Virus record (IMG/VR): IMGVR_UViG_3300042545_001134
Location: 1 to 64,000 of that record
DNA: 64,000 nucleotides
Direction: 5' to 3' (one strand)
The notes under the pieces were generated by a model, which was not told the origin of the DNA, searched no databases, and saw only the letters and a list, made by a program, of their open reading frames with translations. Shown here in pieces: positions 504 through 60,465 of this stretch (within the stretch, counting starts at the first letter, position 1; each line of letters opens with the position of its first letter). The position numbers and the translations under genes were made by a program.

Positions 504-516
504 CTAAAAACACAAT

Positions 517-43653: not shown

Positions 43654-43671
43654 AAGATGTTTGTTTCGAAA

Positions 43672-45051: not shown

Positions 45052-45457
45052 TTGTCATTGGTATTTAGGAACTATTAAAGACAACTAATCGAAGGGGGTG
45101 AGAAATCATCCCCTTTTTTTGTGCTCAATTGGCACTGTATTTCAGGAACTGTACTGGTCCCGACAGGTGTGAATTTGATTGGCAGAACGGAAACCCTTGT
45201 AAATAAAGGAAGTATTACATCTGGGCGCTGCGCTGGTAAACCAGCACGTGCTGCTGTTCTGAGCTCAGTGAATTTGATTGGCACTGTATTACAGATAATA
45301 AGTAAACATTTTTGCTTACAAAACTTGCCAATCAATATTCCGGATGGAGCCACGGTTCGTATCCCCATAAAAATATTTTAAAAATAAATGTAAATAAATT
45401 TGGATATTAAAAAATATGTTGTATATTCGTATAATCAAACAATAAAAATATATAACT

Positions 45458-45751
45458 ATGATTAATGTAATTTTAGACACACGACCTAATGTGTACGGAT
45501 TCGGACACGATTGGTTCTTGAATGTAGAGACGAACTCTTGTTCAAAACAATTCAGACTTGGACAAGATGTTAAAGTTTGTTCACGACTTTTAGGAATGAC
45601 ACCTAAAGAAGTTACAACCGAAATTGGAAGTAACGACTTACGAAGAAAAACTACTCGTAAGAAACTTGGGGAGTATATTCTATACAAGATTGGTATTTGT
45701 TACGAAGAAGAAATTGAAACTTTACAACCTTGGGAACTTTCAGTTGATTAA
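45458..45751 (+). CDS. Hypothetical protein
   Basis: Cassette ORF. Confidence 0.75.
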   Translation: MINVILDTRPNVYGFGHDWFLNVETNSCSKQFRLGQDVKVCSRLLGMTPKEVTTEIGSNDLRRKTTRKKLGEYILYKIGICYEEEIETLQPWELSVD

Positions 45752-46045
45752 GACCTTTCATTTTTGTTTAACCCTCGGACTTAATTGTTCGGGGGTTTTT
45801 TTATGTCTGAAGAACTTGAGTCAGGGGCCCGGGTGAGAATTTGATTGGCAACAAATCTTGCCGAACAAGTTTCACAGTGGGCCCTGAACTGAGATGGAAA
45901 CTTCTTGATGTTGCCAATCAATATTCCGGATGGTGCATGGTGAAGTATCCTTCAGAAAAATAATTTGAAAATAAATGAAAATAAATTTGGAATATCCAAC
46001 TATTCATATTATATTTGTGTATTGTTAATCACTAATACTATTATT

Positions 46046-46249
46046 ATGTCAGAAAAACTGAAAATTCAAAGTTCAATCGTACCAACTGAAAGACCATCTT
46101 TCAACGAATGGGTACAAGAAAAAAATGTATCGGGTTTGTATCTTGAACCAACGGAGTACTATCGAGGTAATTCTACCACAATAGGAATGATGTACCTTAA
46201 AAAAGAAGAAACCCCATTATCTAAATTTATTAAATTCTTTTCAATATGA
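46046..46249 (+). CDS. Hypothetical protein
   Basis: Start MSEK at 46046; ERPSFNEW motif. Confidence 0.65.
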   Translation: MSEKLKIQSSIVPTERPSFNEWVQEKNVSGLYLEPTEYYRGNSTTIGMMYLKKEETPLSKFIKFFSI

Positions 46250-46482
46250 TGAGTAACGAATTAATCGGAAAAAGAATCAAACTTATTACAATGTTTGATG
46301 ACCCACACCCAATCGAAAGTGGAAGTATGGGAACAATTTCTCACGTCGGTGGTGATGTGATGAATGTAACTTGGGACAACGGGAGAAGTCTTGGTGTAGT
46401 AATCGGAGTAGACAAGTACGAAATACTTGAAGACACTGACCTACCACCCCACAATTTTCTTGTCTTTTCGGGAAATATCTGA
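46246..46482 (+). CDS. DUF4314-like protein
   Basis: MFDDPHPI..GTISHV..VTWDNGRSLGV. Confidence 0.75.
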   Translation: MMSNELIGKRIKLITMFDDPHPIESGSMGTISHVGGDVMNVTWDNGRSLGVVIGVDKYEILEDTDLPPHNFLVFSGNI

Positions 46483-46591
46483 GGGACAGCACACGGGTGG
46501 AATTTGATTGGCAACAAAATAAAGTTTCACCCATTGTATATCCCAAAAATTAATCGTATATTTGTACCACAATTTAAAACCCTATATAGAG

Positions 46592-46915
46592 ATGTTAATT
46601 AAACTAACGTATTACGGAACAGGTAAACCAACTTTGGTGAACCTTGAAAGTGTAGAAACAATGTACCAAGTGATAGACAAGAATAGAACTCGTTTATCTA
46701 CAAAGGTGTCATTTAAAGGTGGTAACTATATCAACGTAGAGGAAGAACTGCAGGAAATTTTAAAACACCAATCGAATCTGATGAAAGGCATCGACCAAGA
46801 TTTTGATTGGCAAAGTCCAACAATAGACGATATGTTAGAACTTGATTACAATCGTCAACAAACACATCCTAAACGTGATTGGACACGTAACGAAAGAGTT
46901 ATTAATAACTATTAA
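46592..46915 (+). CDS. Hypothetical protein
   Basis: Start MLIK at 46592. Confidence 0.7.
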   Translation: MLIKLTYYGTGKPTLVNLESVETMYQVIDKNRTRLSTKVSFKGGNYINVEEELQEILKHQSNLMKGIDQDFDWQSPTIDDMLELDYNRQQTHPKRDWTRNERVINNY

Positions 46916-47401
46916 AATAAACGACTATGATTAGTATGTTAAAAGAATTCTACACTTTGAGTAAAGAAGTGTATTACACAGATAGGAAAGAATTTTGGGA
47001 ATCCATATTAGGTATGGTACTCATAGTGGGAATGTTCTTGGTAACGTTCTACGTACTCATCCCTATCTTCACGGAAGGCCCGTCATATCTTGATTAATCA
47101 TTGTTTGGTTCATATTGATTAGTGTTTGGTTAGTAAGAAATCCCTCATCAGAAATGGTGGGGGTTTTTTCTGCTCTGAAGTTTCTTTCCCACTGCGGTCC
47201 GCATGCGGGACCAGGTCCAATTTTGGTTGGCAGTGTATGACATATAAAGGGTGTATTACACTTAGGGTTGCCAATCAAATTCAGGGATTAGCATGACGGT
47301 GAGCAACTCCTCAAGAAAAAATAAATTTAAAATAATTGAAAATAAATTTGGATTATACTTAAAACTGTTTTATCTTTGTGTAACAATTAAAAAATAATCA
47401 A

Positions 47402-48259
47402 ATGACAGAACAAACAAATCGTGTTCAAGATGTACTGAATCAGACAGGCTTGAATTGGACAGTTAGAGAAGAATCTCTTACAACTGAAAGTGGTATCATT
47501 ATCCCACAACAAAAGGCAATCATCCGTGATGATACGAACACGGTATTGTCAGTTCACGGTGAGGGTTATTACCCTTATCAAAATCATCAACTAATTGAGT
47601 TACTTGATAAGGTATCTCAACAAGTAGGTTTACCTATTCACAAAGGTGGTATGTTTGGTGATGGTAAGAAAGTGTTTATCCAATTAAAGTCTAATGACCT
47701 TAAGCTGGGAACAGACAGAGTAGAGGGTTTCATTACTGGTGTTAATTCATTCGATGGTTCAACATCATTGGCATTCGGACCCAGTAACATTACTATCTCT
47801 TGTCAAAACACATTCTTCGCAGCGTTCCGTAACATGGACACTAAAGTTCGCCACACTAAAAACATGGTGATGAGAGTAGATGAAATCTGCCGTGGTTTGG
47901 AAAGAGTTATTGAAGAAGAAGCTGTGATGTTTGAAGATATCAAACAAATGGCGGACACTAAAATGACAAAGGAAAACCAAGAGTGGGTATCTCGTGTATT
48001 GTTTAATATCGAAAGAGAAGTAAACCTTAACGATGAGAAGTCGTTGTCAACTGTTACTCGTAACAAACTATCTCGTTTTGAAATTGACCTTAATGGTGAA
48101 TTGAAAGATAAAGGTGATAGTCTTTGGGGTTTGTTTAGTGGTGTAACAAAATACACAACTCACTCAATGATTAAAGGTGATAATAGTGAGAACAAAATGT
48201 TTGGTGTTTACGGACAAAGAGAACGAAACATTTTCAAACAACTTGTAGAGTTGGTGTAA
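47402..48259 (+). CDS. DUF932/DUF945 phage-plasmid protein
   Basis: GLNWTV, NSFDGST, CQNTF, LWGLFSGVT.Y..H. Confidence 0.85.
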   Translation: MTEQTNRVQDVLNQTGLNWTVREESLTTESGIIIPQQKAIIRDDTNTVLSVHGEGYYPYQNHQLIELLDKVSQQVGLPIHKGGMFGDGKKVFIQLKSNDLKLGTDRVEGFITGVNSFDGSTSLAFGPSNITISCQNTFFAAFRNMDTKVRHTKNMVMRVDEICRGLERVIEEEAVMFEDIKQMADTKMTKENQEWVSRVLFNIEREVNLNDEKSLSTVTRNKLSRFEIDLNGELKDKGDSLWGLFSGVTKYTTHSMIKGDNSENKMFGVYGQRERNIFKQLVELV

Positions 48260-48452
48260 TACGATAAATTTATTTTTTTCTAATCTAAAACCCCGTTGTC
48301 GTGAGATAGTCGGGGTTTTTTTATGCGCTGAAGTGTGCAGTGGAGCCGCACAGTTGCAGCTCAGAATTTGTTTGGCATAAAAAAATATAAAATAAATTTG
48401 GTATAATAAAATAATTGTTTTATCTTTGTATAATAATCAAAACACAAACACT

Positions 48453-48674
48453 ATGATAAAATCTATTGATGAAAAAAAGAGAGGTAAGGTAGAGATTGAC
48501 CTTACCGGTCCTGACGGAAACGCATTTGTACTATTAGGTCTTGCGAGTAAATGGTCTAAACAAGTTGGTTTAGATTCTAAAAAGATTCACGATGAAATGA
48601 CAAGTGGAGATTATGAGAACTTAGTCGACACTCTCGAAAAGTATTTCGGAGATTATATTATCCTTTATCGTTAA
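48453..48674 (+). CDS. Hypothetical protein
   Basis: IDLTGPDGNAF..SGDYENL. Confidence 0.75.
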   Translation: MIKSIDEKKRGKVEIDLTGPDGNAFVLLGLASKWSKQVGLDSKKIHDEMTSGDYENLVDTLEKYFGDYIILYR

Positions 48675-48690
48675 TAACATAATAAAATAT

Positions 48691-48927
48691 ATGGAAAAAG
48701 AAATCATTTTAGAGCAGTTAGAAAAAATAACAAAAAACAAATGTGGTGGTTGGGAATTGAGATATTTTCATCACACCCTCTACGACACAATCAATAATAG
48801 TATATTAAAAGTATTGGAGGAAATAACAAGTAGTGATGACTTTGAGAAAAAATTAGAAGAAAAGATGATTGAATGTACGTTGAAAAAAATAAAGTTGTCG
48901 TCAATCTACGAAAAACTAAACCAATAG
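48691..48927 (+). CDS. Hypothetical protein
   Basis: ORF track. Confidence 0.65.
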   Translation: MEKEIILEQLEKITKNKCGGWELRYFHHTLYDTINNSILKVLEEITSSDDFEKKLEEKMIECTLKKIKLSSIYEKLNQ

Positions 48928-48933
48928 GTTAAG

Positions 48934-48960
48934 AACCCCGAATAACATCGGGGTTTTTTT
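48934..48960 (+). terminator. Terminator, near-identical to 49533-49558
   Basis: ACCCCGA(A/G)TAACATCGGGGTTTTTT. Confidence 0.8.
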
Positions 48961-49013
48961 ATGCCAACTGTGCACTGTACCTGCACAGGTGACAGGGGTG
49001 ATTTTGTTTGGCA

Positions 49014-49217
49014 TTACATATCATCTAAGAACCTATCACTATATTCCTTTTCATCATCTTTTATTTCTTTGTGTAACCTATACATGTAATAGATAACAAA
49101 GACAAACAACTCAACCCATATCGTATATAATATTCCTTCTACCATGTGTAATAAATATGCCAACCAAAATCGGGAGTCGGACGACAGGTGGTCATCTCCG
49201 TAAAAGATTTTGGTCAT
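49014..49217 (-). CDS. Possible small membrane protein, counter-oriented in the block
   Basis: ORF track only. Confidence 0.35.
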   Translation of the reverse strand: MTKIFYGDDHLSSDSRFWLAYLLHMVEGILYTIWVELFVFVIYYMYRLHKEIKDDEKEYSDRFLDDM

Positions 49218-49278
49218 TCACAAATAAATTTGGTAAAAAGAAAAAATTATTATATCTTTACATTCTAAATTAAAAATT

Positions 49279-49527
49279 ATGGAATATTCAGTAGAACCAA
49301 AAATGTTAAAACAATGGACTGACTTATCGAAAGAAGTCCTTCAAGGTAAAACAATTACCGAAGTTCGGTATCTCAATGATGAAGAAATGAAAATGATGGG
49401 TTGGTACAAACGACCAATTTGTTTTTTCTTAAACGATGGTACAAGTTGTATTCTCTCTTGTGATGATGAGGGTAATGATGGTGGAGTTTTATTTTATGGA
49501 AAGGATGGAGTACTTCCCGTATTGTAA
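49279..49527 (+). CDS. Hypothetical protein
   Basis: DDEGNDGG. Confidence 0.75.
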   Translation: MEYSVEPKMLKQWTDLSKEVLQGKTITEVRYLNDEEMKMMGWYKRPICFFLNDGTSCILSCDDEGNDGGVLFYGKDGVLPVL

Positions 49528-49681
49528 ACAAAGACCCCGAGTAACATCGGGGTTTTTTAATTCCCGTGGCGGGAAGGTTCAGGGCGGAATTTGATTGGCA
49601 AAAATAAATGAAAATAAATTTGTTTTATAAAGGTATTAGTTTTATATTTGTATCGTCTACTAACCAATAGACACCAACACT

Positions 49682-50068
49682 ATGAAAAGTACAATTAAAG
49701 AGTATTATGATTTCTTGAAGAAACAAGATTCAGAGAGATTGGAAAAATTATCTCAAGTAAAAGGTCAGGTTGATAATCAAATGGATACCTATATGTCCAA
49801 ACATGGTTGGGTACGAAAAGGTAAAAGTCAAAAGGTATTCTACACCAAACAATTCAATGGTAAGGATATCGTTGTCGAATATCGTTGTAACTACGGAAAG
49901 GACTTTGATTGTGGGTTACCCGAGTTCGTACACGACAAGTCAATCCCTCATAGTGTTGATAAAATACAAATGGGTTACTTTCATTGGAACGACCAAGACA
50001 CAAGTGGTTGGAGTTTAGATGTGGTAATGGAACGAATGGAAGTCTTTTATGACAAGTACACGAAGTAA
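49682..50068 (+). CDS. Hypothetical protein
   Basis: Cassette ORF. Confidence 0.7.
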   Translation: MKSTIKEYYDFLKKQDSERLEKLSQVKGQVDNQMDTYMSKHGWVRKGKSQKVFYTKQFNGKDIVVEYRCNYGKDFDCGLPEFVHDKSIPHSVDKIQMGYFHWNDQDTSGWSLDVVMERMEVFYDKYTK

Positions 50069-50308
50069 AACGAAACCCTCACAGAAATGTGGGGGTTTTT
50101 TATTTACCTGAAGACTTGAGTCGGGGCCCCTGATGGAATTTGGTTGGCACACAATAGACCATTACAATATGTAATACGTTGCCAACCAATATCCGGATGG
50201 AGACTCACATCTGAGATGGTCTATCAAAAAAAAATAAAAAAAGTATAAAATAAATTTGGTTATACGAAATATTGTTTTATCTTTGTATTGTAATCAAACA
50301 AACAAATT

Positions 50309-50509
50309 ATGTCAAAGTATCAAGTATTATCACCCGATGGGTTTACCATCGAAAGAGAACCCTCTTACTACACAAGTAAGAAAAAGGCGATGGAATCGTT
50401 TTTAAAGTGGAAAGAAAATTACCAAAGACAAGGTTACTACTCATCTACAAAGTATGGTAGAATTCATTTGTCTGATTTAGGAGAGTATTGTCAATTTATA
50501 AAATTATAA
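50309..50509 (+). CDS. Hypothetical protein
   Basis: Cassette ORF. Confidence 0.7.
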   Translation: MSKYQVLSPDGFTIEREPSYYTSKKKAMESFLKWKENYQRQGYYSSTKYGRIHLSDLGEYCQFIKL

Positions 50510-50513
50510 TCGT

Positions 50514-50834
50514 ATGGAAAAGTTCAATCAATTATGTGTATGGTCAGGCACACTTGTAGGTGTAGACCAAATTAAAGATTTTGAAAAGTTTATGTTAGAG
50601 GATGTAGGTGCTCGTGTTAAATACGAAACTGAAATCGAAACATTACCAACTGATGGTGTACCCGAAACGGGAGGAAGAAACGATTTGTTCTTCTTTATTC
50701 ACGATGACGACATCATGAAATTCGCGGTACCTCGTTTATCAATGGGTATTCGTTGGTGGGAAGATGTGTTAAGTAATGGTGGTGGAGTATTGTACAAAGA
50801 AGAAGTATTAATAAAATATCCTAAAACTTGGTAA
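50514..50834 (+). CDS. Hypothetical protein
   Basis: GGRNDLFF..RWWED. Confidence 0.75.
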   Translation: MEKFNQLCVWSGTLVGVDQIKDFEKFMLEDVGARVKYETEIETLPTDGVPETGGRNDLFFFIHDDDIMKFAVPRLSMGIRWWEDVLSNGGGVLYKEEVLIKYPKTW

Positions 50835-50836
50835 TC

Positions 50837-51103
50837 ATGGAAAAATTTAATTTCTACCTTGACCAAAAGGTAACAACATGGATGAGAACGGAATTCTCAG
50901 TCGAAGGTGAATCCCGTGAAGTTGCTCGGCAGATGGCAGTGGACTTCGTAAAGAAAGGTAATACATCAGAGTTACCTTGGGAGGAAGTGATGGACACCAA
51001 AGAGATTATGTTTCTTAAAGATAATGGTGGTATGTCTACCGAAGAAATCTTTGAAGAAGATGGAACTTATGTTTATGTAAATGGAAAGGACGAAGATGAG
51101 TAA
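50837..51103 (+). CDS. Hypothetical protein
   Basis: Operon continuation. Confidence 0.7.
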   Translation: MEKFNFYLDQKVTTWMRTEFSVEGESREVARQMAVDFVKKGNTSELPWEEVMDTKEIMFLKDNGGMSTEEIFEEDGTYVYVNGKDEDE

Positions 51104-51263
51104 TCTAATTGAATGTACCTTTTGTTATTGGGTGGGTGAGGAAGATGAACTCCTTACACAAATGGTAGATAATCAGAATAACCCACAAGACCACACCTTG
51201 TACGAGGAAGTAGTATGTCCACAATGTAAAACCAAAGAAGACCTATCATGCAATATAAAGTAG
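51096..51263 (+). CDS. Small zinc-ribbon protein
   Basis: CTFC..CPQC. Confidence 0.65.
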   Translation: MSNLIECTFCYWVGEEDELLTQMVDNQNNPQDHTLYEEVVCPQCKTKEDLSCNIK

Positions 51264-51601
51264 TATCGTCATCAAACCCATCTGAACTTTCGTCGAAGGT
51301 ATCTGAGATGGTGAATTTAGGTTGGCAACCGGTAGGTGGTCATCAAGTAACCACAACACGAGAAGTGAATCGTTATAGTGGACAACAACACATGGATACG
51401 ATGTATCACACCGAGTACACCCAAACAATGGTAAAGGATGTATTACACATTAAAGACGAAGTTGTGAAAGTCCTTAACACGTTAAAGACCGATGCCGAGA
51501 TGGCGTTAAGTGGAGAATGGGATTGTACTACATCGGAAGGAATGGAAAGTTTCAATGACCAAATTGAACTAATAGATAAAGTACTTGACATTTTGAAATA
51601 G
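51248..51601 (+). CDS. DUF1737-like protein
   Basis: YKVVS..LSSKVSEMVNLGWQPVGG. Confidence 0.6.
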   Translation: MQYKVVSSSNPSELSSKVSEMVNLGWQPVGGHQVTTTREVNRYSGQQHMDTMYHTEYTQTMVKDVLHIKDEVVKVLNTLKTDAEMALSGEWDCTTSEGMESFNDQIELIDKVLDILK

Positions 51602-52009
51602 GTTTCGTATTATTAAGTATATAGACTACATTTCATAGTTGTGGTTTGTGTTTGGTTGAATGGGGGTAAGAAATTATCCCCTTTCTTTTTGTCCAAAATT
51701 CCCGATACAATATACGCCAGGGGGAATTTCTGGGCCACCAGTCGATTTTTGCTTGGCAAGAATTAGTATGTTGCCAACCAATATTCATCAGGACCCAGGG
51801 TCAGAACTTCAGGATAATCGTTAAGAAAGAAATTCTAAAATAAATTTGGATATTCCAACTTTTATTATTAACTTCGTTCTATACAAAGTCAAAGTTATAT
51901 GTGGATAACTTTCATCAAAATAAATAAAAATAAATTTGGTGGACTGAAATAAACTTTATATCTTTGTATTGTAAATTAATTATTATTCATTTAACTAAAT
52001 CAAAAGAAG

Positions 52010-52756
52010 ATGATTTCAAACGGAAAAAAAGTGAACCAAGTGTTCCAAACAAAAAACTACGGAATTTTTAAGTTCCGTACCGACAACCGAGTACTTAACC
52101 CTACTCACATTAAAAAACTATCTGAAAAGATGAAGAACATTGGGTGGATTCCCGGTTCTTATGTTGTAATCAACGAGAAAGGTGAAATTATTGACGGACA
52201 ACACCGAGTAAGTGCCGCCAAAATGGTAGGAGTTCCTATCTCTTACACCATTGAAAGAAAGTCAAACTTTGACACCATTCGTAGTTTGAACCAAAACCAA
52301 AAGAATTGGTCATTCACCGATTACATTCACGGATATGTTAAAGAGGACAATGTACATTATACATTGTTAGATGAATTCCTTACCGAGTTCAAAGATTTCA
52401 AACCAACCGAGGCGTTGATGTTTTTACAAAACAATTCAAATCCCGTACATCGTGATGTATTTGAAAGTGGTTCGTGGGAATCAAAAGATGTGGAGTTAGG
52501 TAAAGATTGGGCTAAAAAGATTCAATCACTTAAACCATTCTTTGATAAAGGTTACAACAAGTCAATCTTTGTAAGGTCAATGATTAAGTTGATGTCAAGA
52601 AAACCCGAGTTTACCTTTGAGGAGTTCTTACACAAAGTTCAACTAAGACCTGGAATGATTCACCTTTGTGGTTCAGTTGAATTATACACCGAAATGATTG
52701 AGGACATCTACAACTATCGTAGACGAAACAATGAAAAACTTAATCTTCGTTTTTGA
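52010..52756 (+). CDS. ParB N-terminal-like domain protein
   Basis: HIKKL..VINEKGEIIDGQHRVSAA. Confidence 0.75.
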   Translation: MISNGKKVNQVFQTKNYGIFKFRTDNRVLNPTHIKKLSEKMKNIGWIPGSYVVINEKGEIIDGQHRVSAAKMVGVPISYTIERKSNFDTIRSLNQNQKNWSFTDYIHGYVKEDNVHYTLLDEFLTEFKDFKPTEALMFLQNNSNPVHRDVFESGSWESKDVELGKDWAKKIQSLKPFFDKGYNKSIFVRSMIKLMSRKPEFTFEEFLHKVQLRPGMIHLCGSVELYTEMIEDIYNYRRRNNEKLNLRF

Positions 52757-52940
52757 TTTAGGAACGATGAATAACGAGAGGGGGTATCTGAAAAGATATC
52801 CCTTTTTTTTGTGTCATACATTTCCTTCCCGCCGCAGGACCTGAGATGTCGGATTTTGTTTGGCAAACTTTTTTTTGATATTTTATTGTTTATTCAAATA
52901 TTCTTCTTACCTTTGCTCTTGAAATCAACTACATAGTATT

Positions 52941-53312
52941 ATGTTTCAAAAAGAAAAAAAGAACAACGCGGTCTCATTGAAGAAATCTTTAAATGAAATT
53001 CGTAAGTGTTTAAACAAAAGTATCCCTAATATTTCTGATAAAGAATTAGTAGGGGTGAAGTTTTCTCGTATTGGTGCAGAGTATCGTATAGAGAACGCTC
53101 CCATTCCACCATCTGATACAATCGGATTACAACTTGAAAAGTCATTCAACGACTTCATGAGTAATCTGAATATAAACTATGGTGGAGTTAAGATTGAAGG
53201 TTCCATGTTTTTGGGAACTAAATCGGACATGTTCATGTTGGGTTACAACAACTACGAACGAAAAGGAAAGAAAATAACCAAAAATGGTTATTCAATAGAT
53301 GGAAGTTTATAG
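52941..53312 (+). CDS. Hypothetical protein
   Basis: Cassette ORF. Confidence 0.65.
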   Translation: MFQKEKKNNAVSLKKSLNEIRKCLNKSIPNISDKELVGVKFSRIGAEYRIENAPIPPSDTIGLQLEKSFNDFMSNLNINYGGVKIEGSMFLGTKSDMFMLGYNNYERKGKKITKNGYSIDGSL

Positions 53313-53675
53313 TGTAGATTAATAATTGTTCGGTTCAGGAAACCTCGGCAGAAATGTCGGGGTTTTTTTATGCTGCAAAATCTGTAGCAACGCAGCGCGC
53401 AAACATCCAGTGATTTTGTTTGGCAGAATGTAAACCCCCGTAAATAAAGGAATTCTTATTTCTAGTTAAAACAGCACATCGCCAGTAATGGCAGCGCAAC
53501 CTGGTGCTGTTGCTGCCAGGTGATTTTGTTTGGCAGTTGCCAACCAACATTCACAGTGGGCCCCTGAAGACGACTCGAAAAAATAAATGAAAAAAAATAT
53601 AAAAATAATTTGGTTATACGAAATATTGTTTTATCTTTGTACTGTAATCAAAACATAAACAAAAAAATTAAAATT

Positions 53676-54275
53676 ATGGGTCAGTATTTTAAAGCAATCG
53701 TATTAGGTAACGAACCTAAAGACGGAGAACAAGAAGTAGTAAAGTCGTGGGTATATTCACATGAATATGACAACGGACTTAAACTGATGGAACATTCCTA
53801 TCAAGGAAACACTTACGTTTCTACATTTGAAAAGGAATTAACTCGTAGAGGTACAAACTATAAAAGTCGTGTAGTTTGGGCTGGTGATTATGCGGATGTG
53901 GAACCTGGAGTAAAAATCATTCAAGAAGGTAAAGAGTACGATGCAAATTTGTATTCACTTTGTCATGACGGCAACGAGGTTAAACCTAAAGTGGGAAACA
54001 CTAAAGATTACCCGTACATTTTAAATCACTCTAAAAAATTATTCGTGGATAAAAACAAGGTTCCCGAAATTCAGGATTGGGAAGGCACAAAGATTCACCC
54101 TTTACCATTATTAACATGTGAAGGTAACGGACAAGGTGGTGGAGATTTTAGGGGTGAACATGTTTTAATTGGTTCATGGGCAAGAGATGTTATTTCTGTG
54201 GAAAAAGATAATCCCGTAATAACTCACGGAACTATGGACTACACCGAGATAATTTTTGATTTGAAAGAAGGATAG
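53676..54275 (+). CDS. Hypothetical protein
   Basis: MGQYFK..KLMEHSY..VWAGDYAD..HPLPLLT.EGNG.GGGD. Confidence 0.8.
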   Translation: MGQYFKAIVLGNEPKDGEQEVVKSWVYSHEYDNGLKLMEHSYQGNTYVSTFEKELTRRGTNYKSRVVWAGDYADVEPGVKIIQEGKEYDANLYSLCHDGNEVKPKVGNTKDYPYILNHSKKLFVDKNKVPEIQDWEGTKIHPLPLLTCEGNGQGGGDFRGEHVLIGSWARDVISVEKDNPVITHGTMDYTEIIFDLKEG

Positions 54276-54391
54276 ATAAATAATCCCCCCTAACAGGGGG
54301 GAATTTGTTTGGCAAAAATAATTGAAAATAAATTTGGTTTATAAAAGTATTCGTATTATATTTGTATTACCAAACATTAAACACTAAAAAT

Positions 54392-54787
54392 ATGAAAAGT
54401 ATTAAAGTTCGTTTCAATCTCGGTAGAGGTAAAAACTATTTGAAGTGGAAGGTAACACATCCTGATGGTGATGTTATCTACTATAGTCCTGATGAAGTAC
54501 AAATGGTAATGACCGAGTGTACATTTAAGAACCACAAGAGTACCGCACAGAAAATTTTCGATGGTGCACACAAAACAGTTTGTGCGTGGATACTATGTAA
54601 GGACATTAAGATTTACACAGGTAAACCAATCACGGATGAAAGTAGAAGGGTTCGTTATAATCCACGTGTCCAACCTAACTGGATATTCGATGGTCATATC
54701 ATGGATAATGATGGGGTGCCGAAATTACACACAATTGAAAGTGGCGTTTATATCACAGAAGGAAAAGGTGAAAATTGTTTGGCATAA
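54392..54787 (+). CDS. Hypothetical protein
   Basis: KVRFNL..HKTVCAW..YNPR. Confidence 0.75.
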   Translation: MKSIKVRFNLGRGKNYLKWKVTHPDGDVIYYSPDEVQMVMTECTFKNHKSTAQKIFDGAHKTVCAWILCKDIKIYTGKPITDESRRVRYNPRVQPNWIFDGHIMDNDGVPKLHTIESGVYITEGKGENCLA

Positions 54788-54865
54788 AATAAATAAAAAA
54801 AACTTTAAAAATAATTTGGTATAATAAAATAAATGTTATACCTTTGTACCACAAACAAATTTAAT

Positions 54866-55177
54866 ATGAAAAAGACCAAAGAACTTTATCGAAGTAAACT
54901 ACACACAAGAGATAAATCTCACGATGTAGTAATCATCCAAGACATTACAAGAGTAAGTGGATGTAAATTAAAAATGACCTACGAATGTTACAACGCAGTT
55001 GAACGATTTACAGGTGAACGACTTGTAGGTGGTAAATGGGAGTTTAACTTCTCGATGTCAGATTTGGGTGTATCATCCGATAGTTCAATGTATGTGAGTA
55101 GTCAAGATAACCGACTATCACGAGCAGAGGACTTAATGAAAAGAGGAATAGAATTGTTTAACATTTTAAATCAATAA
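54866..55177 (+). CDS. Hypothetical protein
   Basis: Cassette ORF. Confidence 0.7.
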   Translation: MKKTKELYRSKLHTRDKSHDVVIIQDITRVSGCKLKMTYECYNAVERFTGERLVGGKWEFNFSMSDLGVSSDSSMYVSSQDNRLSRAEDLMKRGIELFNILNQ

Positions 55178-55181
55178 GAAA

Positions 55182-55730
55182 ATGGGATTAGATATGTATC
55201 TCTCGAAAAAGACCTATGTTAAAAATTGGTCTCATCAAACTCCTGAAGAAAAACATTCAGTTGAAGTTAAGAAAGGTGGTGTATTACGCACAGACATCAA
55301 ACCTGAAAGAATAAGTTATATTACTGAAGAAGTAATGTATTGGAGAAAGTCAAACCAAATTCACGGATGGTTCTGTAACAACACGGAAGAATTGGTGGAC
55401 AATGTAAGGTACGATGTATCGAGAGACCATCTTGAACAACTACTCTCTGATTGTAAGAAGGTTTTGGAAATCTTAAACACTTCAACTAAATCAATAACTC
55501 AAGTTGCTGGTGGTTGGAAAGATGGTAAGGAATATATGGTTGATGTCGAAGTGTATGACAATGTGGATGAGGTGATGGAAATTCTACCACCAACACAGGG
55601 GTTCTTCTTTGGTTCAGATACTATCGATGATTGGTATAAGCAGGACATCGAAAACACTATCAATGTTCTTACCGAAGAACTAACAGGTATAGAGGCGTAT
55701 TCGGATTACTCATACTACGCATCTTGGTAA
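55182..55730 (+). CDS. Conserved phage hypothetical protein (MGLDMY family)
   Basis: MGLDMYL, YWRKSNQIHGWF, GFFFGS, YYASW. Confidence 0.8.
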   Translation: MGLDMYLSKKTYVKNWSHQTPEEKHSVEVKKGGVLRTDIKPERISYITEEVMYWRKSNQIHGWFCNNTEELVDNVRYDVSRDHLEQLLSDCKKVLEILNTSTKSITQVAGGWKDGKEYMVDVEVYDNVDEVMEILPPTQGFFFGSDTIDDWYKQDIENTINVLTEELTGIEAYSDYSYYASW

Positions 55731-55808
55731 ATTAAAAATAATGGGAATACCATTAGGAATAATGGTATTCTCTTTATATCTTTGTATCACATATAAAAAA
55801 TAGAAATC

Positions 55809-56450
55809 ATGCCAAACTGGTGTAATAACTTCATAGAAATTCAAGGGGATAAGAAAACTATCCAAAAATTAAGTCGAATCATTGAGAGTTCAAAGATTCC
55901 GGGCGATGATAATCGTGGTGTGTTCTCCGCATTGATTGGGATTAAACCATCTGTTACAGCGGAAGATTATGATAAAGGTGAGTGGTATGACGCAAACACA
56001 TCTTGGTTTGGAACTAAATGGGACATCTCATATGATGAATGTAATTACACATTTGATGATGAGTCCATTTCATTTAGTTGTGAAACGGCGTGGTCGCCCC
56101 CAATTTCATTCCTTGCCACTTTATGTAAGATGTATGGGGTATCAGGTGTTATTACATATGAGGAGGGTGGTTGTGACTTTGCGGGTAAGACCACAATCAA
56201 TGAAGAAGGTGATATATTGGAGGAAGAAGATTACACATACAATGAAGGATTATATTTTCTTAATAATGAATGTTTTTGGATGGAGTTGGAAAGTAACATT
56301 GAATACCACGCAGACGAGAATACTTCACCAGATGATTTCGTTTCCAATTACGATTATGTAACGGACGAAGACAAAGTAGAAATAAAGAAACTTTACGAGG
56401 AGTATCTCGTAGATAACGATATCACAATAGAGAAAGAAGAAAATGCATAG
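55809..56450 (+). CDS. DUF1281/YubB ferredoxin-like protein
   Basis: MPNWCNN, WFGTKWD, CETAWSPP, YEEGGCDFAG. Confidence 0.8.
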   Translation: MPNWCNNFIEIQGDKKTIQKLSRIIESSKIPGDDNRGVFSALIGIKPSVTAEDYDKGEWYDANTSWFGTKWDISYDECNYTFDDESISFSCETAWSPPISFLATLCKMYGVSGVITYEEGGCDFAGKTTINEEGDILEEEDYTYNEGLYFLNNECFWMELESNIEYHADENTSPDDFVSNYDYVTDEDKVEIKKLYEEYLVDNDITIEKEENA

Positions 56451-56688
56451 TACACAACATAGGTCAGTAGTAGAACCCCCCGAGAGGGTTTCGTTTGAAG
56501 AATGGTTTGAGGAGTTTAATGTTTCACGACTCCACAGAGCAAAAAGTATGGAACAACGAGTTCTATTAGATGAAACAGCAGCGTTCGCTGAAGAATATGA
56601 GAAAAAAACAGACGGGACAGCAGCAACCGAGAATTTGCTTGGCAAACTTTTAAAATTTAAAAACAGAATACATGGGACGAGTAAATAA
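56443..56688 (+). CDS. Hypothetical protein
   Basis: ERVSFEEW motif; 3' half contains a box module. Confidence 0.5.
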   Translation: MHSTQHRSVVEPPERVSFEEWFEEFNVSRLHRAKSMEQRVLLDETAAFAEEYEKKTDGTAATENLLGKLLKFKNRIHGTSK

Positions 56689-57160
56689 GACAATTGAGGG
56701 GGTTTTCACAAACATCGTAGGTACCTCAAGTGAAATCAGTACTTACAATCAATTCATTAATCAAGGTGAGGATTTAAATATTTCTAAGGAACTACAGGAC
56801 CTCACTGACACATATGTGAAGTTAGTTAACGAAAGTAAGAACACATTCGAACAGTTGGCATCTTTGGAGGAGATTATCATGCAAATGAGAATCAAGGAGA
56901 ACTTAGATGATATCAAATTATCATTGGTTCGTGAATACATCTACGCAAGGACTCCATTCTATCGCAAGGATAAGAAGGCCAAGGATGTTAGGGTCATAGT
57001 GAACAAAGTGGAGTTTCATCCTGAGGTGGACAGTGAAGGAATCGAGATTTTGTTTGGCAATGAGGAATTCATGGCAAGAGCAAAAGAGAAGTTGGTTCAG
57101 TCAATGGACAGTGAGATAAAGGAGAACATCCGATTACTAAAACAAATGTTGAACAATTAA
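56672..57160 (+). CDS. Hypothetical coiled-coil protein
   Basis: ORF track. Confidence 0.75.
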   Translation: MGRVNKTIEGVFTNIVGTSSEISTYNQFINQGEDLNISKELQDLTDTYVKLVNESKNTFEQLASLEEIIMQMRIKENLDDIKLSLVREYIYARTPFYRKDKKAKDVRVIVNKVEFHPEVDSEGIEILFGNEEFMARAKEKLVQSMDSEIKENIRLLKQMLNN

Positions 57161-57421
57161 ATTTGGAGTCATGGACGAAAGAGCACAATTCATTAGAATC
57201 GCAATGGCAAGATTAAACTCTGTGTACATTTTTAAACCACAGAGGTTGGCGGTTGCGGCAAAGATGTACCGAAAGTACTTGGAACGGAAAGAACAGAGAA
57301 ACGACTAACCGTCCTCAGGATGGTGACAGGTGGTCGATTTTGTTTGGCAGAAAAAAATATCATAAAAGATTTGGAATATTCTAGAATTAATATTAACTTC
57401 GTACTTTAAAACCAAAATATT

Positions 57422-57739
57422 ATGTCATATAAACAACAAGTACAGGATTTACAGAATGATATTATAAAAAATATCAAACGATTCGTGGGTGAACTCGGTC
57501 AAGATGAATTACATTTTAACGAGATGTTTAGAGTTTGGGTAACGATATCAACTTGGGACGATGATTATGTTCGTGTGTCATACGCGGCAGTCGGGTTACG
57601 GGGTGAGTTTGTTATCTGCACCAGTGAGGTTGAGGAAGAAGAAATTCAATTAGGGGAACTCGACATATATGAGTTGTCATACATTTTAGATTTACTAATA
57701 TCAAATCAATTTAAAACCGATAACAATGGACAAGATTAA
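57422..57739 (+). CDS. Hypothetical protein
   Basis: Cassette ORF. Confidence 0.7.
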   Translation: MSYKQQVQDLQNDIIKNIKRFVGELGQDELHFNEMFRVWVTISTWDDDYVRVSYAAVGLRGEFVICTSEVEEEEIQLGELDIYELSYILDLLISNQFKTDNNGQD

Positions 57740-58307
57740 ATTAAACAGTAAGGTCGTTGTATCCGACCCTTGTTACACAATTCCAACTTGGTGTCAGGCC
57801 ATAGTTGATGGTGTATTACCTGGCAACTATAATGTGTTCTGTAAAAGACACGACTTAGGTGACTGGGGAGTTCGTAACTCAATGTTACTTATAGTACACG
57901 AGGACCACACAAACGACACTCTTGAGTGGGAATCACATCCCGCAACAATTGGTGTTGACTCTGGTCAGTGTGGATTCTTCTCAAGTGAATCATATCGTAA
58001 TGACTCTCACCCAATTGAAAAGGGTGGGGCTGACTTCTCTTGTTCTCGAGGTGAAGAAGGTGATGAGTTCTATGACAAGATGGGACAGAGAACTTTGACC
58101 ACAGAGTCATATGGTGTGTATGACGAGGGTGCGGTGTGTTCATCAGGTATAGGAGATGGTTCATATATGTTGTTTACGGCAGAGGATGATTTTGGTAATG
58201 TAATAGGAATGGCGGTGGACTTCTTAATTGAGGGTCCTGAAGACGAGGAGGATGATACAAACAACTTCATCGATTTCGAATTCTATAAAGAAGAACTTGT
58301 AAAATGA
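57726..58307 (+). CDS. DUF4241-like protein
   Basis: VVVSDPCY, IGVDSGQCG, SSGIGDGSY. Confidence 0.7.
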   Translation: MDKIKLNSKVVVSDPCYTIPTWCQAIVDGVLPGNYNVFCKRHDLGDWGVRNSMLLIVHEDHTNDTLEWESHPATIGVDSGQCGFFSSESYRNDSHPIEKGGADFSCSRGEEGDEFYDKMGQRTLTTESYGVYDEGAVCSSGIGDGSYMLFTAEDDFGNVIGMAVDFLIEGPEDEEDDTNNFIDFEFYKEELVK

Positions 58308-58368
58308 TAGTAATAGGAATCATCATCGTTATCGTACTTTTGTCGATACTAAAAGAAATAAAGAAGAA

Positions 58369-58635
58369 ATGAAAAAGTTATTCATAGTGATGGGATTGGC
58401 AATCGGTGGTTGCCAATCACCACAAACCTTAATCATGAAGTCGGACTTCACCGCAGTAAATCAGGACTCCACTAAGTTGTGGATTAAGGATACTGAATTT
58501 GGTAAACATCTGTACAACGCATGGAAGACAGGAGTTTATGGGGACGACACGAAAGTATACCTGTTGGACAGCACAGAATTCAACAATTTGGTTGGCACAA
58601 AATCAAAGTCCAAGAATCCGACGGTGAGTCTGTAG
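58369..58635 (+). CDS. Small lipoprotein
   Basis: Lipobox AIGGC. Confidence 0.6.
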   Translation: MKKLFIVMGLAIGGCQSPQTLIMKSDFTAVNQDSTKLWIKDTEFGKHLYNAWKTGVYGDDTKVYLLDSTEFNNLVGTKSKSKNPTVSL

Positions 58636-58682
58636 ACCCCCCGATTTTGTTTGGCAAGAAATATTAATTTAAATAAATCCAT

Positions 58683-59120
58683 ATGGAACCGAATTTAATT
58701 ATCAAACCATCCCAATGGTTAAACCTTGGGTGGTACGCATTAACAGTGGGAGGATTATACATCCATGAGTACTTGGGGTTATTCTTCTTAGTAATCCTGA
58801 TTTATAAAATCTTGGACATCTACTGTTGGAGTTACAGGTTCTACGACGATATCATTGTGGAGAAGAGAGGAATCCTGAATGTGACCCAAGAAGAGGTTCA
58901 TTACTTCAGAATCAAATCCATGATGGTGGAGGAACCATTCTTCCAACGTTTATTGGAACTGTCGACCATCAACATGTCTACATCTGAACATCTCAAACAG
59001 AACTTCGTTCTACATGGTATTTTAAAGGCAGAGGAAACTAAAGAATACCTTGCGAAGATGACCAAGACTAAGAGACGTAGTAATGGAATCCGCGAGATGG
59101 ATATCATCAACGGGTACTAA
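58683..59120 (+). CDS. Membrane protein with bacterial PH (bPH_2) domain
   Basis: TM hairpin, EKRGIL..YFRIKS..QRLLELSTI. Confidence 0.75.
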   Translation: MEPNLIIKPSQWLNLGWYALTVGGLYIHEYLGLFFLVILIYKILDIYCWSYRFYDDIIVEKRGILNVTQEEVHYFRIKSMMVEEPFFQRLLELSTINMSTSEHLKQNFVLHGILKAEETKEYLAKMTKTKRRSNGIREMDIINGY

Positions 59121-59337
59121 CCCTGATGGACCTGAAGACAGGTGACGATTTTGTTTGGCAGGGATTACCGTCCGACGGGACCTGAGATGGTCGATTTTGT
59201 TTGGCAAGGGTTAACCTTCCTCAGGACGACCCCGGAATCAGGATTTTGTTTGGCAATAGTTTTTTGAAATATTTTGTAACGGGATTTGGAAATGTCAGAT
59301 TTATTGGTTATATTTTATATATAAAACTGATAATATT

Positions 59338-59523
59338 ATGGCAAACAAAAAAATCACTCAGAGACAACCAGGTAAGGTAACTGCATACGAACCTGTGTCG
59401 CATCACATCTACCACGATGGTTATTCATATCGTGTACGTGTGATTAAGAACGGTACCCGTTACAGTCAGAATTTCTCTAGTAGAAAGAAGGCAATGGATT
59501 TCCGCAAGTCATTGTTATCTTAA
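59338..59523 (+). CDS. Small basic protein, AP2/Arm-type DNA-binding-like
   Basis: IYHDGYSYRVRVIKNGTRYSQNFSSRKKAMDFRK. Confidence 0.55.
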   Translation: MANKKITQRQPGKVTAYEPVSHHIYHDGYSYRVRVIKNGTRYSQNFSSRKKAMDFRKSLLS

Positions 59524-59724
59524 TAGGATAACTTTACGTGGGTTCTCCATTCCACAATGGGGGACCACTAGACCCGTGGTAACCCCACGGGTTTTTTTCG
59601 TTACCACAGAAACCTGACTCAGGATGGTATCCTGGATTTTGTTTGGCAAGGACACCCGTGTTGTAACATCTAACACTGTCGATTTTGTTTGGCAAGGATG
59701 TGTATGACAGAACTATTTATATGT

Positions 59725-60465
59725 ATGACACAGAAACTAATAAACCTACTGAATGAGGACGATACTCAAAAGGTAGAACAAATGATACAAGACTTCGAGG
59801 GGTACAACCAAAATGGTATCGAGGTGGTTATGGTGAAGAAAGGTGATAGTGGTGGGGCCATAATGATGATACGGATAACATCCCCAACAATAACAGATGA
59901 TATAGTAAACGAAAAGTTAGAGGTCATCTCAAAGGACTTACAGTCCAAAGGGTATGGTGACCTAATTTTACTTTTCGTAGTTAGTGCCGTATACTATACA
60001 CCTGAAGGTGTGGATTTAAAAATCGATGTGATGAACTATCAACCACACCAAATCAAAAATAACCTGAGATATGAGTACCCTTCAATTCAGGATATACTAA
60101 TGGGTAATGTGGACTTTACTATACAATCCAATGTAATACCTACGGTTAATCAGGACACCGCAGAGTGGATTCGTATTAAGAAGAAGAGATGTATGACAGT
60201 ATATCAGGTACTCCAAAAAGGTTCAGTTAATGGTGTGTCATACACACTAGGTCCCATCCATGGGATGAGTGAGGTGGAACCTACGGTTACTCCGAACTAT
60301 AAAAAGACCTTACAGAGGGACACCATTAATCAACTTCTGTTATCCGTCGAATTAAACGTCCGTATTACAGAGGTCTCCGACCTCAATAGAAAGGACGAAG
60401 TCTCATACGGTATCAAAGAGAAGTTCGAAAAGTTTGGTGTCAACGTGGAAGTCATGGTGAACTAA
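59725..60465 (+). CDS. Hypothetical protein with LLNED leader
   Basis: TATTTATA at 59714 just upstream. Confidence 0.7.
   Translation: MTQKLINLLNEDDTQKVEQMIQDFEGYNQNGIEVVMVKKGDSGGAIMMIRITSPTITDDIVNEKLEVISKDLQSKGYGDLILLFVVSAVYYTPEGVDLKIDVMNYQPHQIKNNLRYEYPSIQDILMGNVDFTIQSNVIPTVNQDTAEWIRIKKKRCMTVYQVLQKGSVNGVSYTLGPIHGMSEVEPTVTPNYKKTLQRDTINQLLLSVELNVRITEVSDLNRKDEVSYGIKEKFEKFGVNVEVMVN

What the first reader, a model, noticed from the sequence alone, without database searches (positions are those of the whole stretch)
59147..59694. Tandem box arrays with 46-49-bp period flank a tiny AP2-like DNA-binding gene
Seen: GATTTTGTTTGGCA occurs at 59147, 59193 and 59242 upstream, and at 59635 and 59681 downstream, of the 61-aa basic protein at 59338. 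Copies are separated by unique GC-rich 32-35-nt segments, giving a repeat-spacer look. Established: AP2/Arm-type three-stranded sheets bind DNA sequence-specifically. Inference: this is the autoregulated cognate binding protein of the box. Alternatively, the units are processed small RNAs.
Basis: inference. Interest (0 to 1): 0.65.

Follow-up and report, generated by a model that had tools for sequence, protein, structure and literature searches.

The report
Phage gene-block boxes and their small binder
The five boxes around the tiny gene are real, but they belong to about 50 copies of a 14-base signal that marks almost every gap between genes in an 18-kb block of a 311-kb freshwater phage, and the tiny basic protein is the best candidate for the factor that reads it.

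Summary
GATTTTGTTTGGCA sits at 59147, 59193, 59242, 59635 and 59681, around a conserved 61-aa basic protein.

It is not a local array. About 49 copies of RAWTTTGNTTGGCA, on both strands, lie in 41.2-59.7 kb of a 310,691-bp jumbo phage. They occupy 22 of 26 intergenic gaps, between intrinsic terminators and Bacteroidota-type promoters. The other 290 kb hold only about 10 copies.

In 17 related phage lineages the small gene's homologue keeps a box about 80-150 nt before its start and another after its terminator. The box sequence changes by lineage, and each variant is multi-copy in that phage's block.

The protein has no Pfam family. Its model (four short strands packed against a C-terminal helix) matches AP2 and integrase-arm domains weakly. 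A related domain is fused to an HNH endonuclease.

Best reading (confidence about 0.5): the boxes are operators of this protein, which regulates the whole accessory-gene block. Because they are repeated, they also serve as junctions for gene-cassette swaps, as PeSLs do in T4-type phages.

The "spacers" are not unique. Nothing supports small RNAs or a CRISPR-like array. Binding and the sign of regulation are untested.

The parts
41226..59694 (.). Box-bearing block. About 37 small + strand genes, mostly without any known family. It holds 49 copies of RAWTTTGNTTGGCA (34 on +, 15 on -), found in 22 of 26 intergenic gaps of 45 nt or more.
   Evidence: Pfam scans
58643..58656 (+). Exact box, 26 nt before the start of the bPH_2 membrane-protein gene (58683-59120).
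59147..59160 (+). Distal upstream box, centred about -167.5 from the predicted transcription start.
59193..59206 (+). Middle upstream box, centred about -121.5.
59242..59255 (+). Promoter-proximal box, centred about -72.5. Relatives keep a box at an equivalent position even where the box sequence differs.
59285..59316 (+). Predicted Bacteroidota sigma-A promoter of the small gene: -33 TTTG at 59285-59288, a 20-nt spacer, and -7 box TATATTTT at 59309-59316. The inferred start is near 59321.
   Evidence: sequence; conserved in relatives; consensus and position of the -7 box from PMC9723704. The start site is inferred, not mapped.
59338..59523 (+). Gene for the 61-aa basic protein, the candidate box-binding regulator.
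59570..59601 (+). Intrinsic terminator of the small gene: a 10-pair stem followed by a T run.
   Evidence: the hairpin is kept in relatives with changed sequence
59635..59648 (+). First downstream box.
59681..59694 (+). Second downstream box, 30 nt before the start codon of the next gene.
59725..60465 (+). Next gene (246 aa), always the downstream neighbour in relatives. It has a confident model but no recognisable fold and no obvious sigma-A promoter of its own.

Best explanation
The 14-nt box RAWTTTGNTTGGCA is a DNA site read by the 61-aa basic protein encoded at 59338-59523. This is a stand-alone domain of AP2 / integrase-arm type. The protein would be made from a strong host-type promoter at the far end of an 18-kb block of small accessory genes. 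It would bind the boxes that sit between each gene's terminator and the next gene's promoter, including the densest clusters around its own gene. In this way it would tune transcription of the whole block together with its own.

The sign of regulation is not settled. I lean slightly to negative feedback or shut-off, as with Cro or omega, because the promoters already look strong. The preferred box positions near -61.5, -72.5 and -82.5 would equally fit a class-I-type activator.

Because the same short sequence bounds every gene, the boxes also act as junctions where gene cassettes are swapped between related phages.

Shown: the distribution, the architecture, the conservation, the linkage to the gene, and one cassette swap. 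Inferred: binding, promoter positions, direction of regulation.
For: (1) Confinement. 49 of 59 genomic core matches lie in 41-60 kb. The relative G001 has 38 of its 40 matches in one 30-kb block, with the small gene at the block's edge.

(2) Regular architecture. Each gap reads stop, terminator, GC-rich stretch, box or boxes, A-rich stretch, -33/-7 promoter, gene. Terminator-like sites number 41 against 11.8 expected.

(3) Linkage across box turnover. In 17 lineages with about 10 different box variants, a copy lies at -80 to -148 and another at +272 to +361 of the small gene. Each variant occurs 6-23 times per 20-kb locus and is almost absent beyond the next gene. In L179 the box is found only around the small gene.

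(4) Selection. Among close relatives, boxes and promoter are about as conserved as the coding sequence (0.85-0.88 identity), against 0.70 for the spacers. Conservation is position-specific, with invariant positions around freely varying positions 3 and 8.

(5) Box centres cluster at about -50.5, -61.5, -72.5 and -82.5 from predicted starts. A Rayleigh test gives p about 1e-4 to 2e-5 for a 10.5-11 bp period, with n=81 that are not independent.

(6) Protein. It is basic. The model has pLDDT 82. Top fold rows include AP2 domains (6sy0 Z 5.0, 2gcc Z 4.2) and arm-type domains (3jtz Z 4.2, 1bb8 Z 3.5). Language-model neighbours are Tn916-integrase DNA-binding clusters at 0.88. A homologous domain (hhalign probability 94%) heads a NUMOD4-HNH endonuclease.

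(7) No other protein of the block has a recognisable DNA-binding domain.
Against: No binding data exist. All fold and family matches are below significance, which is expected for a domain of about 45 residues but is still weak. There is no Pfam AP2 or Arm hit.

All related loci were found through the small gene, so co-occurrence is partly built in. The gene may simply be a core gene that sits at the block's end.

The constant distance of the proximal box could reflect a conserved promoter cassette and not a functional constraint. The phasing statistic counts orthologous and duplicated promoters as if they were independent.

Proteins that are about 88% identical go with rather different boxes (L214 against L221). 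Three box subtypes coexist in this genome and are locally homogenised. Both facts fit concerted evolution by recombination as well as protein co-evolution.

Distances from box to promoter are variable in the 41-51 kb modules.
Confidence: 0.5

Rival explanations
1. The boxes are only recombination linkers, that is PeSL-like regulatory-cassette boundaries. Short conserved sequences between terminator and promoter would be kept uniform by gene conversion and would let co-infecting phages exchange genes. No dedicated binding protein is needed. The tandem 46-49-nt units would be empty cassettes.
For: L248 and L249 encode an identical small protein. In L248 a 93-aa gene replaces the 31-nt segment between box 1 and box 2 of L249, with the boxes intact on both sides. 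Box number varies from 2 to 4 among close relatives. A 199-aa gene present here but absent from L176 is bounded by boxes. Neighbouring boxes share subtypes. The block is rich in genes of no known family, each with its own promoter and terminator, like T4 hyperplastic regions (PMC2839356, PMC4122927).
Against: A 14-nt identity is very short for homologous exchange. 15 of the 49 copies are inverted, which would favour harmful inversions. Conservation is position-specific and not uniform. Flanks diverge while the box stays exact. This reading does not explain why the densest clusters always bracket the one gene with a DNA-binding-like fold, nor the L179 case. It is compatible with the main explanation and not exclusive of it.
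Confidence: 0.25
2. RNA-level element. The boxes act in transcripts, either as processed small RNAs or as hairpins formed by inverted pairs, and are bound by the small protein acting as a truncated double-stranded-RNA-binding domain.
For: 17 of 27 family members give weak, sub-threshold hits to Pfam dsrm, best E 0.0038. 15 boxes form convergent pairs that could fold into 10-14-bp stems. Metatranscriptome contigs cross both arrays, one spanning 58698-59888 and one 59359-59796. The small gene's start region is an 11-of-12 complement of the box.
Against: Most boxes lie after intrinsic terminators and before promoters. Both orientations occur. The flanks are not structured (mean z -0.27). There is no Rfam family. 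The model lacks the first helix of a dsRBD, and structural rows for dsRBDs are poor, with rmsd 7-12 A. The start-codon complementarity is absent in G001. The RNA evidence is contigs only, which show no ends, strand or level and may include DNA.
Confidence: 0.08
3. Site-specific recombination sites, like integron attC or integrase arm sites, with the small protein as an arm-binding accessory factor.
For: The fold resembles integrase arm-type domains. Arm sites are typically tandem direct repeats. The boxes bound gene cassettes, and left and right copies of pairs differ systematically.
Against: No tyrosine or serine recombinase domain is found anywhere in the 311-kb genome, although the control genomes all responded to the same searches. 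The spacing between paired boxes ranges from 1 to about 200 nt.
Confidence: 0.05
4. CRISPR-like repeat-spacer array.
For: Regular 46-49-nt period with GC-rich intervening segments.
Against: The repeat is only 14 nt. The spacers are related to each other and to flanks elsewhere. Copies are dispersed singly and in both orientations over 18 kb. The real CRISPR-like array of this phage, with 36-nt repeats next to a Cas12f/TnpB-like gene, lies at 63353-63694 and is unrelated in sequence.
Confidence: 0.01

Closest known systems
PeSLs (promoter-early stem-loops) of T4-type phages (PMC2839356, PMC4122927)
   Same: Short composite terminator/promoter modules repeated between small, mostly unknown genes of a plastic genome region. 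The repeats serve as points of gene exchange; one swap is seen here.
   Different: Here an extra, sharply conserved 14-nt box lies between terminator and promoter, often as convergent pairs or tandem copies. It changes by lineage and is tied to one small protein gene. The promoters are of Bacteroidota type (TTTG / TAnnTTTG), not sigma-70 type. No mini-circles were looked for.
Small phage or plasmid global regulators with repeated operators (lambda Cro; omega of pSM19035). From my own knowledge, not tested here.
   Same: A protein of about 60-70 aa, encoded next to its own sites, binding several short repeats in direct or inverted order before its own and other promoters.
   Different: The fold is different (helix-turn-helix or ribbon-helix-helix there). 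Those operators overlap the promoters, whereas these lie 50-140 nt upstream. About 50 sites is a far larger set.
Class-I activator geometry (CRP at -61.5/-72.5/-82.5) and T4 MotA with its boxes. From my own knowledge.
   Same: A preferred site position near -61.5 with steps of about 10-11 bp. A phage-encoded factor reading a short box at many phage promoters.
   Different: MotA boxes replace the -35 element. Start sites here are predicted, not mapped. Activation is not shown.
AP2 / integrase arm-type DNA-binding domains, including the DNA-binding modules of HNH homing endonucleases
   Same: A small beta sheet packed on one C-terminal helix. The best structural rows are of this class. A homologous domain is fused to NUMOD4-HNH.
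   Different: No Pfam AP2 or Arm model matches. The protein is stand-alone, with a Lys/Thr-rich tail that in some relatives grows into KPAAKPA-type repeats.
Integron attC gene cassettes
   Same: A same-direction array of small genes, each followed by a short conserved boundary element, with cassette gain and loss.
   Different: There is no integrase. The genes carry their own promoters and terminators. The boundary is a 14-nt sequence motif, not a structured 57-141-nt site.

Membership tests
AP2/ERF domain (PF00847) | Match to the family's sequence model | tested here: not met
   No Pfam family at E up to 0.1 for the protein. AP2 is not among the families hit by any of 27 relatives at E up to 10.
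AP2/ERF domain (PF00847) | Three-stranded antiparallel sheet packed against a C-terminal helix | tested here: inconclusive
   The model (pLDDT 82) has strands 18-21, 24-26, 31-37 and 40-46 and a helix at 49-60. VIA-align rows: 6sy0 Z 5.0, 2gcc Z 4.2 (rmsd 2.0 over 43), 7wq5, 7et4. Foldseek E values are all above 0.4. A Z below 8 is not decisive.
AP2/ERF domain (PF00847) | Sequence-specific binding to double-stranded DNA | not testable with these tools
   Needs EMSA, SELEX or DAP-seq.
Integrase arm-type DNA-binding domain (PF02920, PF14657 and kin) | Sequence-model match, or fusion to or partnership with a tyrosine recombinase | tested here: not met
   No Pfam hit. No Phage_integrase domain in the whole genome. 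Only lead-level resemblance: atlas score 0.88, 3jtz Z 4.2, 1bb8 Z 3.5.
Double-stranded RNA-binding motif (PF00035) | Alpha-beta-beta-beta-alpha fold and a score above the Pfam threshold | tested here: not met
   Only sub-threshold hits, best E 0.0038, in 17 of 27 members. The model has no N-terminal helix. dsRBD structural rows have rmsd 7-12 A.
CRISPR array | Repeats of 23 nt or more, unique spacers, one orientation, adjacent cas genes | tested here: not met
   14-nt repeat, related spacers, dispersed copies in both orientations.
PeSL-type regulatory cassettes | Repeated terminator plus early promoter between small genes of a plastic region | tested here: met
   Architecture. Terminators number 41 against 11.8 expected. 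30 of 36 block proteins have no Pfam family above its cut-off. The promoters are predicted only.
PeSL-type regulatory cassettes | Gene exchange at the repeats | tested here: inconclusive
   One clean swap between boxes (L248 against L249), and one gene indel bounded by boxes. Breakpoints were not surveyed systematically.
Integron cassettes / attC | Integron integrase and structured attC sites | tested here: not met
   No tyrosine or serine recombinase. The box flanks are not structured.
REP / MITE-type mobile intergenic repeats | A conserved palindromic unit or terminal inverted repeats around a conserved interior | tested here: not met
   The interiors of box pairs vary from 1 to about 200 nt and are mostly unrelated. 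The flanks have no excess structure. A cognate transposase was not searched for.

The most novel reading that the evidence does not exclude
Freshwater Bacteroidota jumbo phages carry an integrase-free gene-cassette platform. Each accessory gene would be bounded by a lineage-specific 14-nt box. A dedicated stand-alone AP2/arm-type protein, co-evolving with the box, would both set the expression of the whole cassette array and mark the boundaries at which cassettes are exchanged. The tandem 46-49-nt units would be empty slots.
Probability: 0.15. Interest if true: 0.8.

Novelty: new variant of a known kind. Interest (0 to 1): 0.55.

Why it matters
Transcription control in phages of Bacteroidota, and in uncultured jumbo phages generally, is almost unknown. 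This finding gives a concrete and cheap-to-test pair: one 61-aa protein family with no annotation, and a short DNA box that changes from lineage to lineage.

If binding is confirmed, it would define a new family of phage regulators. It would also provide natural specificity variants, including a natural chimera, for studying how a regulator and about 50 of its sites change together. It would further explain how the most variable part of these genomes is both expressed and reshuffled.

If binding fails, the boxes remain a clear non-T4 example of recombination linkers in a plastic phage region.

Tried and rejected
- Near-identity search of the block against 50,697 GenBank phage records gave no match.
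- The exact 14-mer alone in IMG/VR gave only single chance hits. Two-box patterns recovered one true relative, G001.
- Pfam, PHROGs and a PDB sequence profile gave nothing for the small protein.
- The box as a promoter for a phage polymerase or sigma factor was rejected. No Rpb1 domain of a multisubunit polymerase was found. The T7-type search is uninformative because its controls also stayed silent. A sigma-70 family gene exists, but the box is confined to one block and occurs in both orientations.
- The box as the host -33 element does not fit, because the spacing to -7 boxes is wrong (sequence).
- A hairpin plus box acting as a second terminator is not supported. The scan flags three cases, but the flanks as a set are not structured.
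- The neighbouring 246-aa protein as the binder is not supported. Its model is confident but has no fold match, with TM below 0.25.
- GTATKACA as a genome-wide promoter was rejected. Its count is as expected genome-wide, yet 24 of 32 copies lie in 40-61 kb, so it is a second block-specific motif that remains unexplained.
- Long multi-stretch hits of the profile search are thrombospondin-type repeats and are spurious.
- The reads tool gave contigs only, so it offers no evidence for or against discrete RNAs.
- No protein-pair prediction was run.

Full report
**The observation**

A sixth exact copy lies at 58643. The ORF encodes a 61-aa protein with pI 10.45. With up to two mismatches the window holds 35 matches against 1.25 expected from shuffles.

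The intervening 32-35-nt segments are GC-rich but not unique. The two upstream ones are 78% alike. The same short GC-rich words recur before other boxes here and in related phages.

**Setting**

The window is the first 64 kb of a single 310,691-bp virus contig with 34.7% GC. It comes from lake water.

The box core TTGNTYGGCA occurs 59 times in the genome, and 49 of those lie in 41.2-59.7 kb. That stretch is a block of about 37 small + strand genes. Of 36 proteins scanned, only six match a Pfam family above its cut-off. Five of these are domains of unknown function or a phage family of unknown role, and one is a membrane-flanked bPH_2 domain. None has a recognisable DNA-binding domain.

22 of the 26 intergenic gaps of 45 nt or more carry at least one box. 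The gaps follow a regular plan:
- stop codon;
- intrinsic terminator (41 terminator-like sites against 11.8 expected);
- about 25-45 nt of GC-rich DNA;
- a + strand box;
- in the 41-54 kb part, often a variable 1-200 nt followed by an inverted box;
- an A-rich stretch;
- a promoter of Bacteroidota type, TTTG then 19-21 nt then TAnnTTTG (consensus and the -12 to -5 position of the -7 box from PMC9723704).

The consensus box is R-A-W-T-T-T-G-N-T-T-G-G-C-A. Positions 3 and 8 vary freely and the other positions are almost invariant.

**The small gene's own unit**

- Boxes are centred at about -167.5, -121.5 and -72.5 from the predicted start.
- The -33 TTTG is at 59285-59288 and the -7 box TATATTTT at 59309-59316. 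The predicted start is near 59321.
- The gene is 59338-59523.
- The terminator is 59570-59601.
- Two more boxes follow. The last one lies 30 nt before the start (59725) of the next gene.

**Relatives**

A two-box pattern search in IMG/VR found a 310,542-bp relative with terminal repeats, G001. It has 40 matches to the 10-nt pattern TTGNTTGGCA. 38 of them lie in one 30-kb block, mostly as convergent pairs. Its single homologue of the small gene sits at the block's edge behind a box pair and the same promoter.

The protein family is small. It has 29 word-search hits and 115 representatives at E up to 0.001 among 1.84 billion proteins. Almost all are stand-alone proteins of 50-115 aa.

Sixty-one IMG/VR loci encode it. 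Most lie on contigs of 50-335 kb, which points to a group of lake and freshwater jumbo phages.

**The key comparative result**

The gene is almost always bracketed by short direct repeats, but the repeat differs by lineage. The variants seen are:
- TTTTGTTTGGCA (this phage);
- TTTAGTTTGGCR;
- ATATTGTCTGGCA;
- ATGTTGTTTGGCA;
- TAATGTTTGGCT;
- TTTACTGGA;
- TTACTGGGG;
- AAACTGGAA;
- ATGACYGGC;
- TGTTTCGCA;
- CCGGTCA;
- an inverted TTCYTTGGCA.

Most of these variants form a graded series around a YTGG core.

In 17 lineages examined, the lineage's own variant occurs 6-23 times per 20-kb locus, where chance expects about 0.15 for a 9-mer. The copies are mostly intergenic. Nearly all lie on the block side of the small gene or within 600 nt after it. 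One copy lies at -80 to -148 from the start codon and one at +272 to +361 in every lineage. Tandem spacing is 38-59 nt, most often 44-48. In L179 (11.5 kb) the box occurs only around the small gene, with three copies before it and one after.

Among close relatives with 77-98% protein identity, boxes and promoter are as conserved as the coding sequence (0.85-0.88). The segments between boxes reach 0.70 and carry indels that are not multiples of three.

**Position relative to promoters**

I used predicted -7 boxes in 23 loci. Box centres cluster near -50.5, -61.5, -72.5, -82.5 and -93. Lineages with different boxes show the same 10-11-nt steps. The Rayleigh test gives p about 1e-4 to 2e-5 for periods of 10.5-11 bp.

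The 81 sites include orthologous and duplicated promoters and the start sites are predictions. I therefore treat this as suggestive only.

**The protein**

- There is no Pfam, PHROG or PDB sequence match.
- AlphaFold2 on the 27-sequence alignment gives pLDDT 82. The model has a disordered basic N-terminus, short strands and a C-terminal helix.
- Foldseek finds nothing significant, but AP2 and arm-type integrase domains are among its top rows.
- The full VIA-align scan puts AP2 domains (6sy0 Z 5.0; 2gcc Z 4.2, rmsd 2.0 over 43), the HPI integrase arm domain (Z 4.2) and the Tn916 integrase N-domain (Z 3.5, rmsd 1.9 over 42) among the first twenty rows. These Z values are too low to be decisive.
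- Language-model neighbours are Tn916-integrase DNA-binding clusters at 0.88, which is a lead only.
- One distant relative (P0137) carries the domain in front of NUMOD4 and HNH_3 endonuclease domains. hhalign gives 94% probability and 40% identity over 47 residues. This fits a DNA-binding module.
- Against this, 17 of 27 members give weak sub-threshold hits to the dsRNA-binding motif.

**RNA evidence**

- Rfam finds only the tmRNA and tRNAs of the window.
- The 34 nt before each box are no more structured than shuffles, with mean z -0.27.
- Two lake metatranscriptome runs hold contigs from related strains that cover 55.5-59.9 kb. One spans 58698-59888 and one spans 59359-59796, and both cross the arrays.
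- These are contigs, so they show presence in an RNA library but no ends, strand or level.

**Recombination**

L248 and L249 encode the same small protein. Where L249 has box, a 31-nt segment, then box, L248 has box, a 93-aa gene with a 21-nt leader and a GC-rich tail, then box. This is what a double exchange at two boxes would give.

Box number upstream of the gene varies from 2 to 4 among close relatives. A 199-aa gene present here but absent from L176 is bounded by boxes.

P0004 (locus L250) is a natural chimera. It has the N-terminal half of the protein and upstream boxes of this phage's type. Its C-terminal half and downstream box are of another lineage's type.

The genome has no tyrosine or serine recombinase. 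It does have a sigma-70 family gene. No Rpb1 domain of a multisubunit RNA polymerase was found, and the T7-type polymerase search is uninformative because the controls also stayed silent.

**Interpretation**

The best-supported reading is that the box is a protein-binding DNA site and that the small protein reads it (confidence about 0.5). The reasons are:
- the sharp, position-specific conservation of the box;
- its use in both orientations;
- its confinement to one transcriptional block;
- its turnover between lineages while host-type promoter elements stay fixed, which points to a phage-encoded reader and not a host one;
- its unbroken linkage to the one gene in the block with a DNA-binding-like fold.

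The protein would then control some 25 intergenic modules as well as itself. The sign of control is open. Strong-looking promoters and the usual logic of small early regulators suggest negative feedback. The -61.5/-72.5/-82.5 pattern would fit class-I-type activation.

The main rival, which is compatible with this reading, is that the boxes are recombination linkers like PeSLs (PMC2839356, PMC4122927). The cassette swap shows that they at least coincide with exchange points. Coexisting, locally homogenised box subtypes also fit concerted evolution.

RNA-based, integron-like and CRISPR-like readings are weak or excluded.

**Novelty**

The system is a variant of known kinds: a phage regulator with repeated operators, and terminator/promoter cassettes of a plastic region. 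It involves an unannotated protein family, and its combination of features has not been described in the literature I could search.

Noticed in passing
window 61795-63694 (gene 61900-63327, minus strand): A 475-aa Cas12f1-like/TnpB protein (PF07282 E 1.4e-14; OrfB_IS605 E 1e-5). On its own strand it is directly preceded by a CRISPR-like mini-array: 5-6 copies of a repeat of about 36 nt, with a period of 65-67 nt and spacers of about 29-30 nt (63353-63694). Two degenerate repeat copies lie after the gene (61795-61879). This is a phage-borne miniature type-V-like system, unrelated in sequence to the boxes.
   Followed up: partly
window 40000-61000, e.g. 42557, 43095, 43752, 45286, 47235, 59702, 59723: A second block-specific motif, GTATKACA. 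24 of its 32 genomic copies lie in 40-61 kb, although the genome-wide count is as expected. About ten copies sit 2-3 nt after a box. The motif is kept unchanged in all related lineages while the box varies. Its reader and role are unknown.
   Followed up: partly
L248:1140-1700 versus L249:1490-1730: Two contigs with an identical small protein differ by a 93-aa gene that replaces the 31-nt segment between two boxes. This is a clean cassette swap with both boxes intact.
   Followed up: yes
L250 (protein P0004): A natural chimera of the small protein. Its N-terminal half and three upstream boxes are of this phage's type. Its C-terminal half and downstream box (AATAATGTTTGGCT) are of the L212/L218 lineage.
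   Followed up: partly
relatives L192, L199, L200, L219, L226 (small-gene homologues): Some homologues carry a 25-40-residue N-terminal extension of KPA/KPAAKPA-type repeats. These resemble histone H1 tails and hint at additional non-specific DNA binding.
   Followed up: no
window 57046-57059: An exact box lies inside the coding sequence 56672-57160, where it encodes ILFG. A box-like sequence is kept at the same place in the orthologues of L176 and L181. It is either an internal site or a coincidence of coding constraint.
   Followed up: partly
window 59339-59357 versus the boxes: The start of the small gene (ATGGCAAACAAAAAAATCAC) is a near reverse complement of the box (11 of 12 over the core). 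This is not conserved in G001, so it is probably a by-product of the M-A-N-K-K coding sequence.
   Followed up: partly
window 59725-60465: The gene that always follows the small gene encodes a 246-aa protein with a confident model (pLDDT 87) but no structural match (TM below 0.25 in PDB and BFVD). It has no evident sigma-A promoter. A conserved TATTTAT lies 4-7 nt before its start codon in many lineages.
   Followed up: partly
window 149-605 and 6451-6857; G000 176791-176997 (beyond the window): The phage carries four tRNAs (Met, Gly, Gln, Ser) and a tmRNA. It encodes a sigma-70 family protein (Sigma70_r2, E 2e-17), with a weaker second match at 266387. No Rpb1 domain of a multisubunit RNA polymerase was detected.
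   Followed up: no
window 41000-54000 (box pairs): Left and right members of convergent box pairs differ systematically. The left copy reads GAATTTG.. The right copy reads AATATTG.. followed by CCGGATGGA, or CATTTTG.. followed by TTTCCGACG. The modules therefore have polarity.
   Followed up: no
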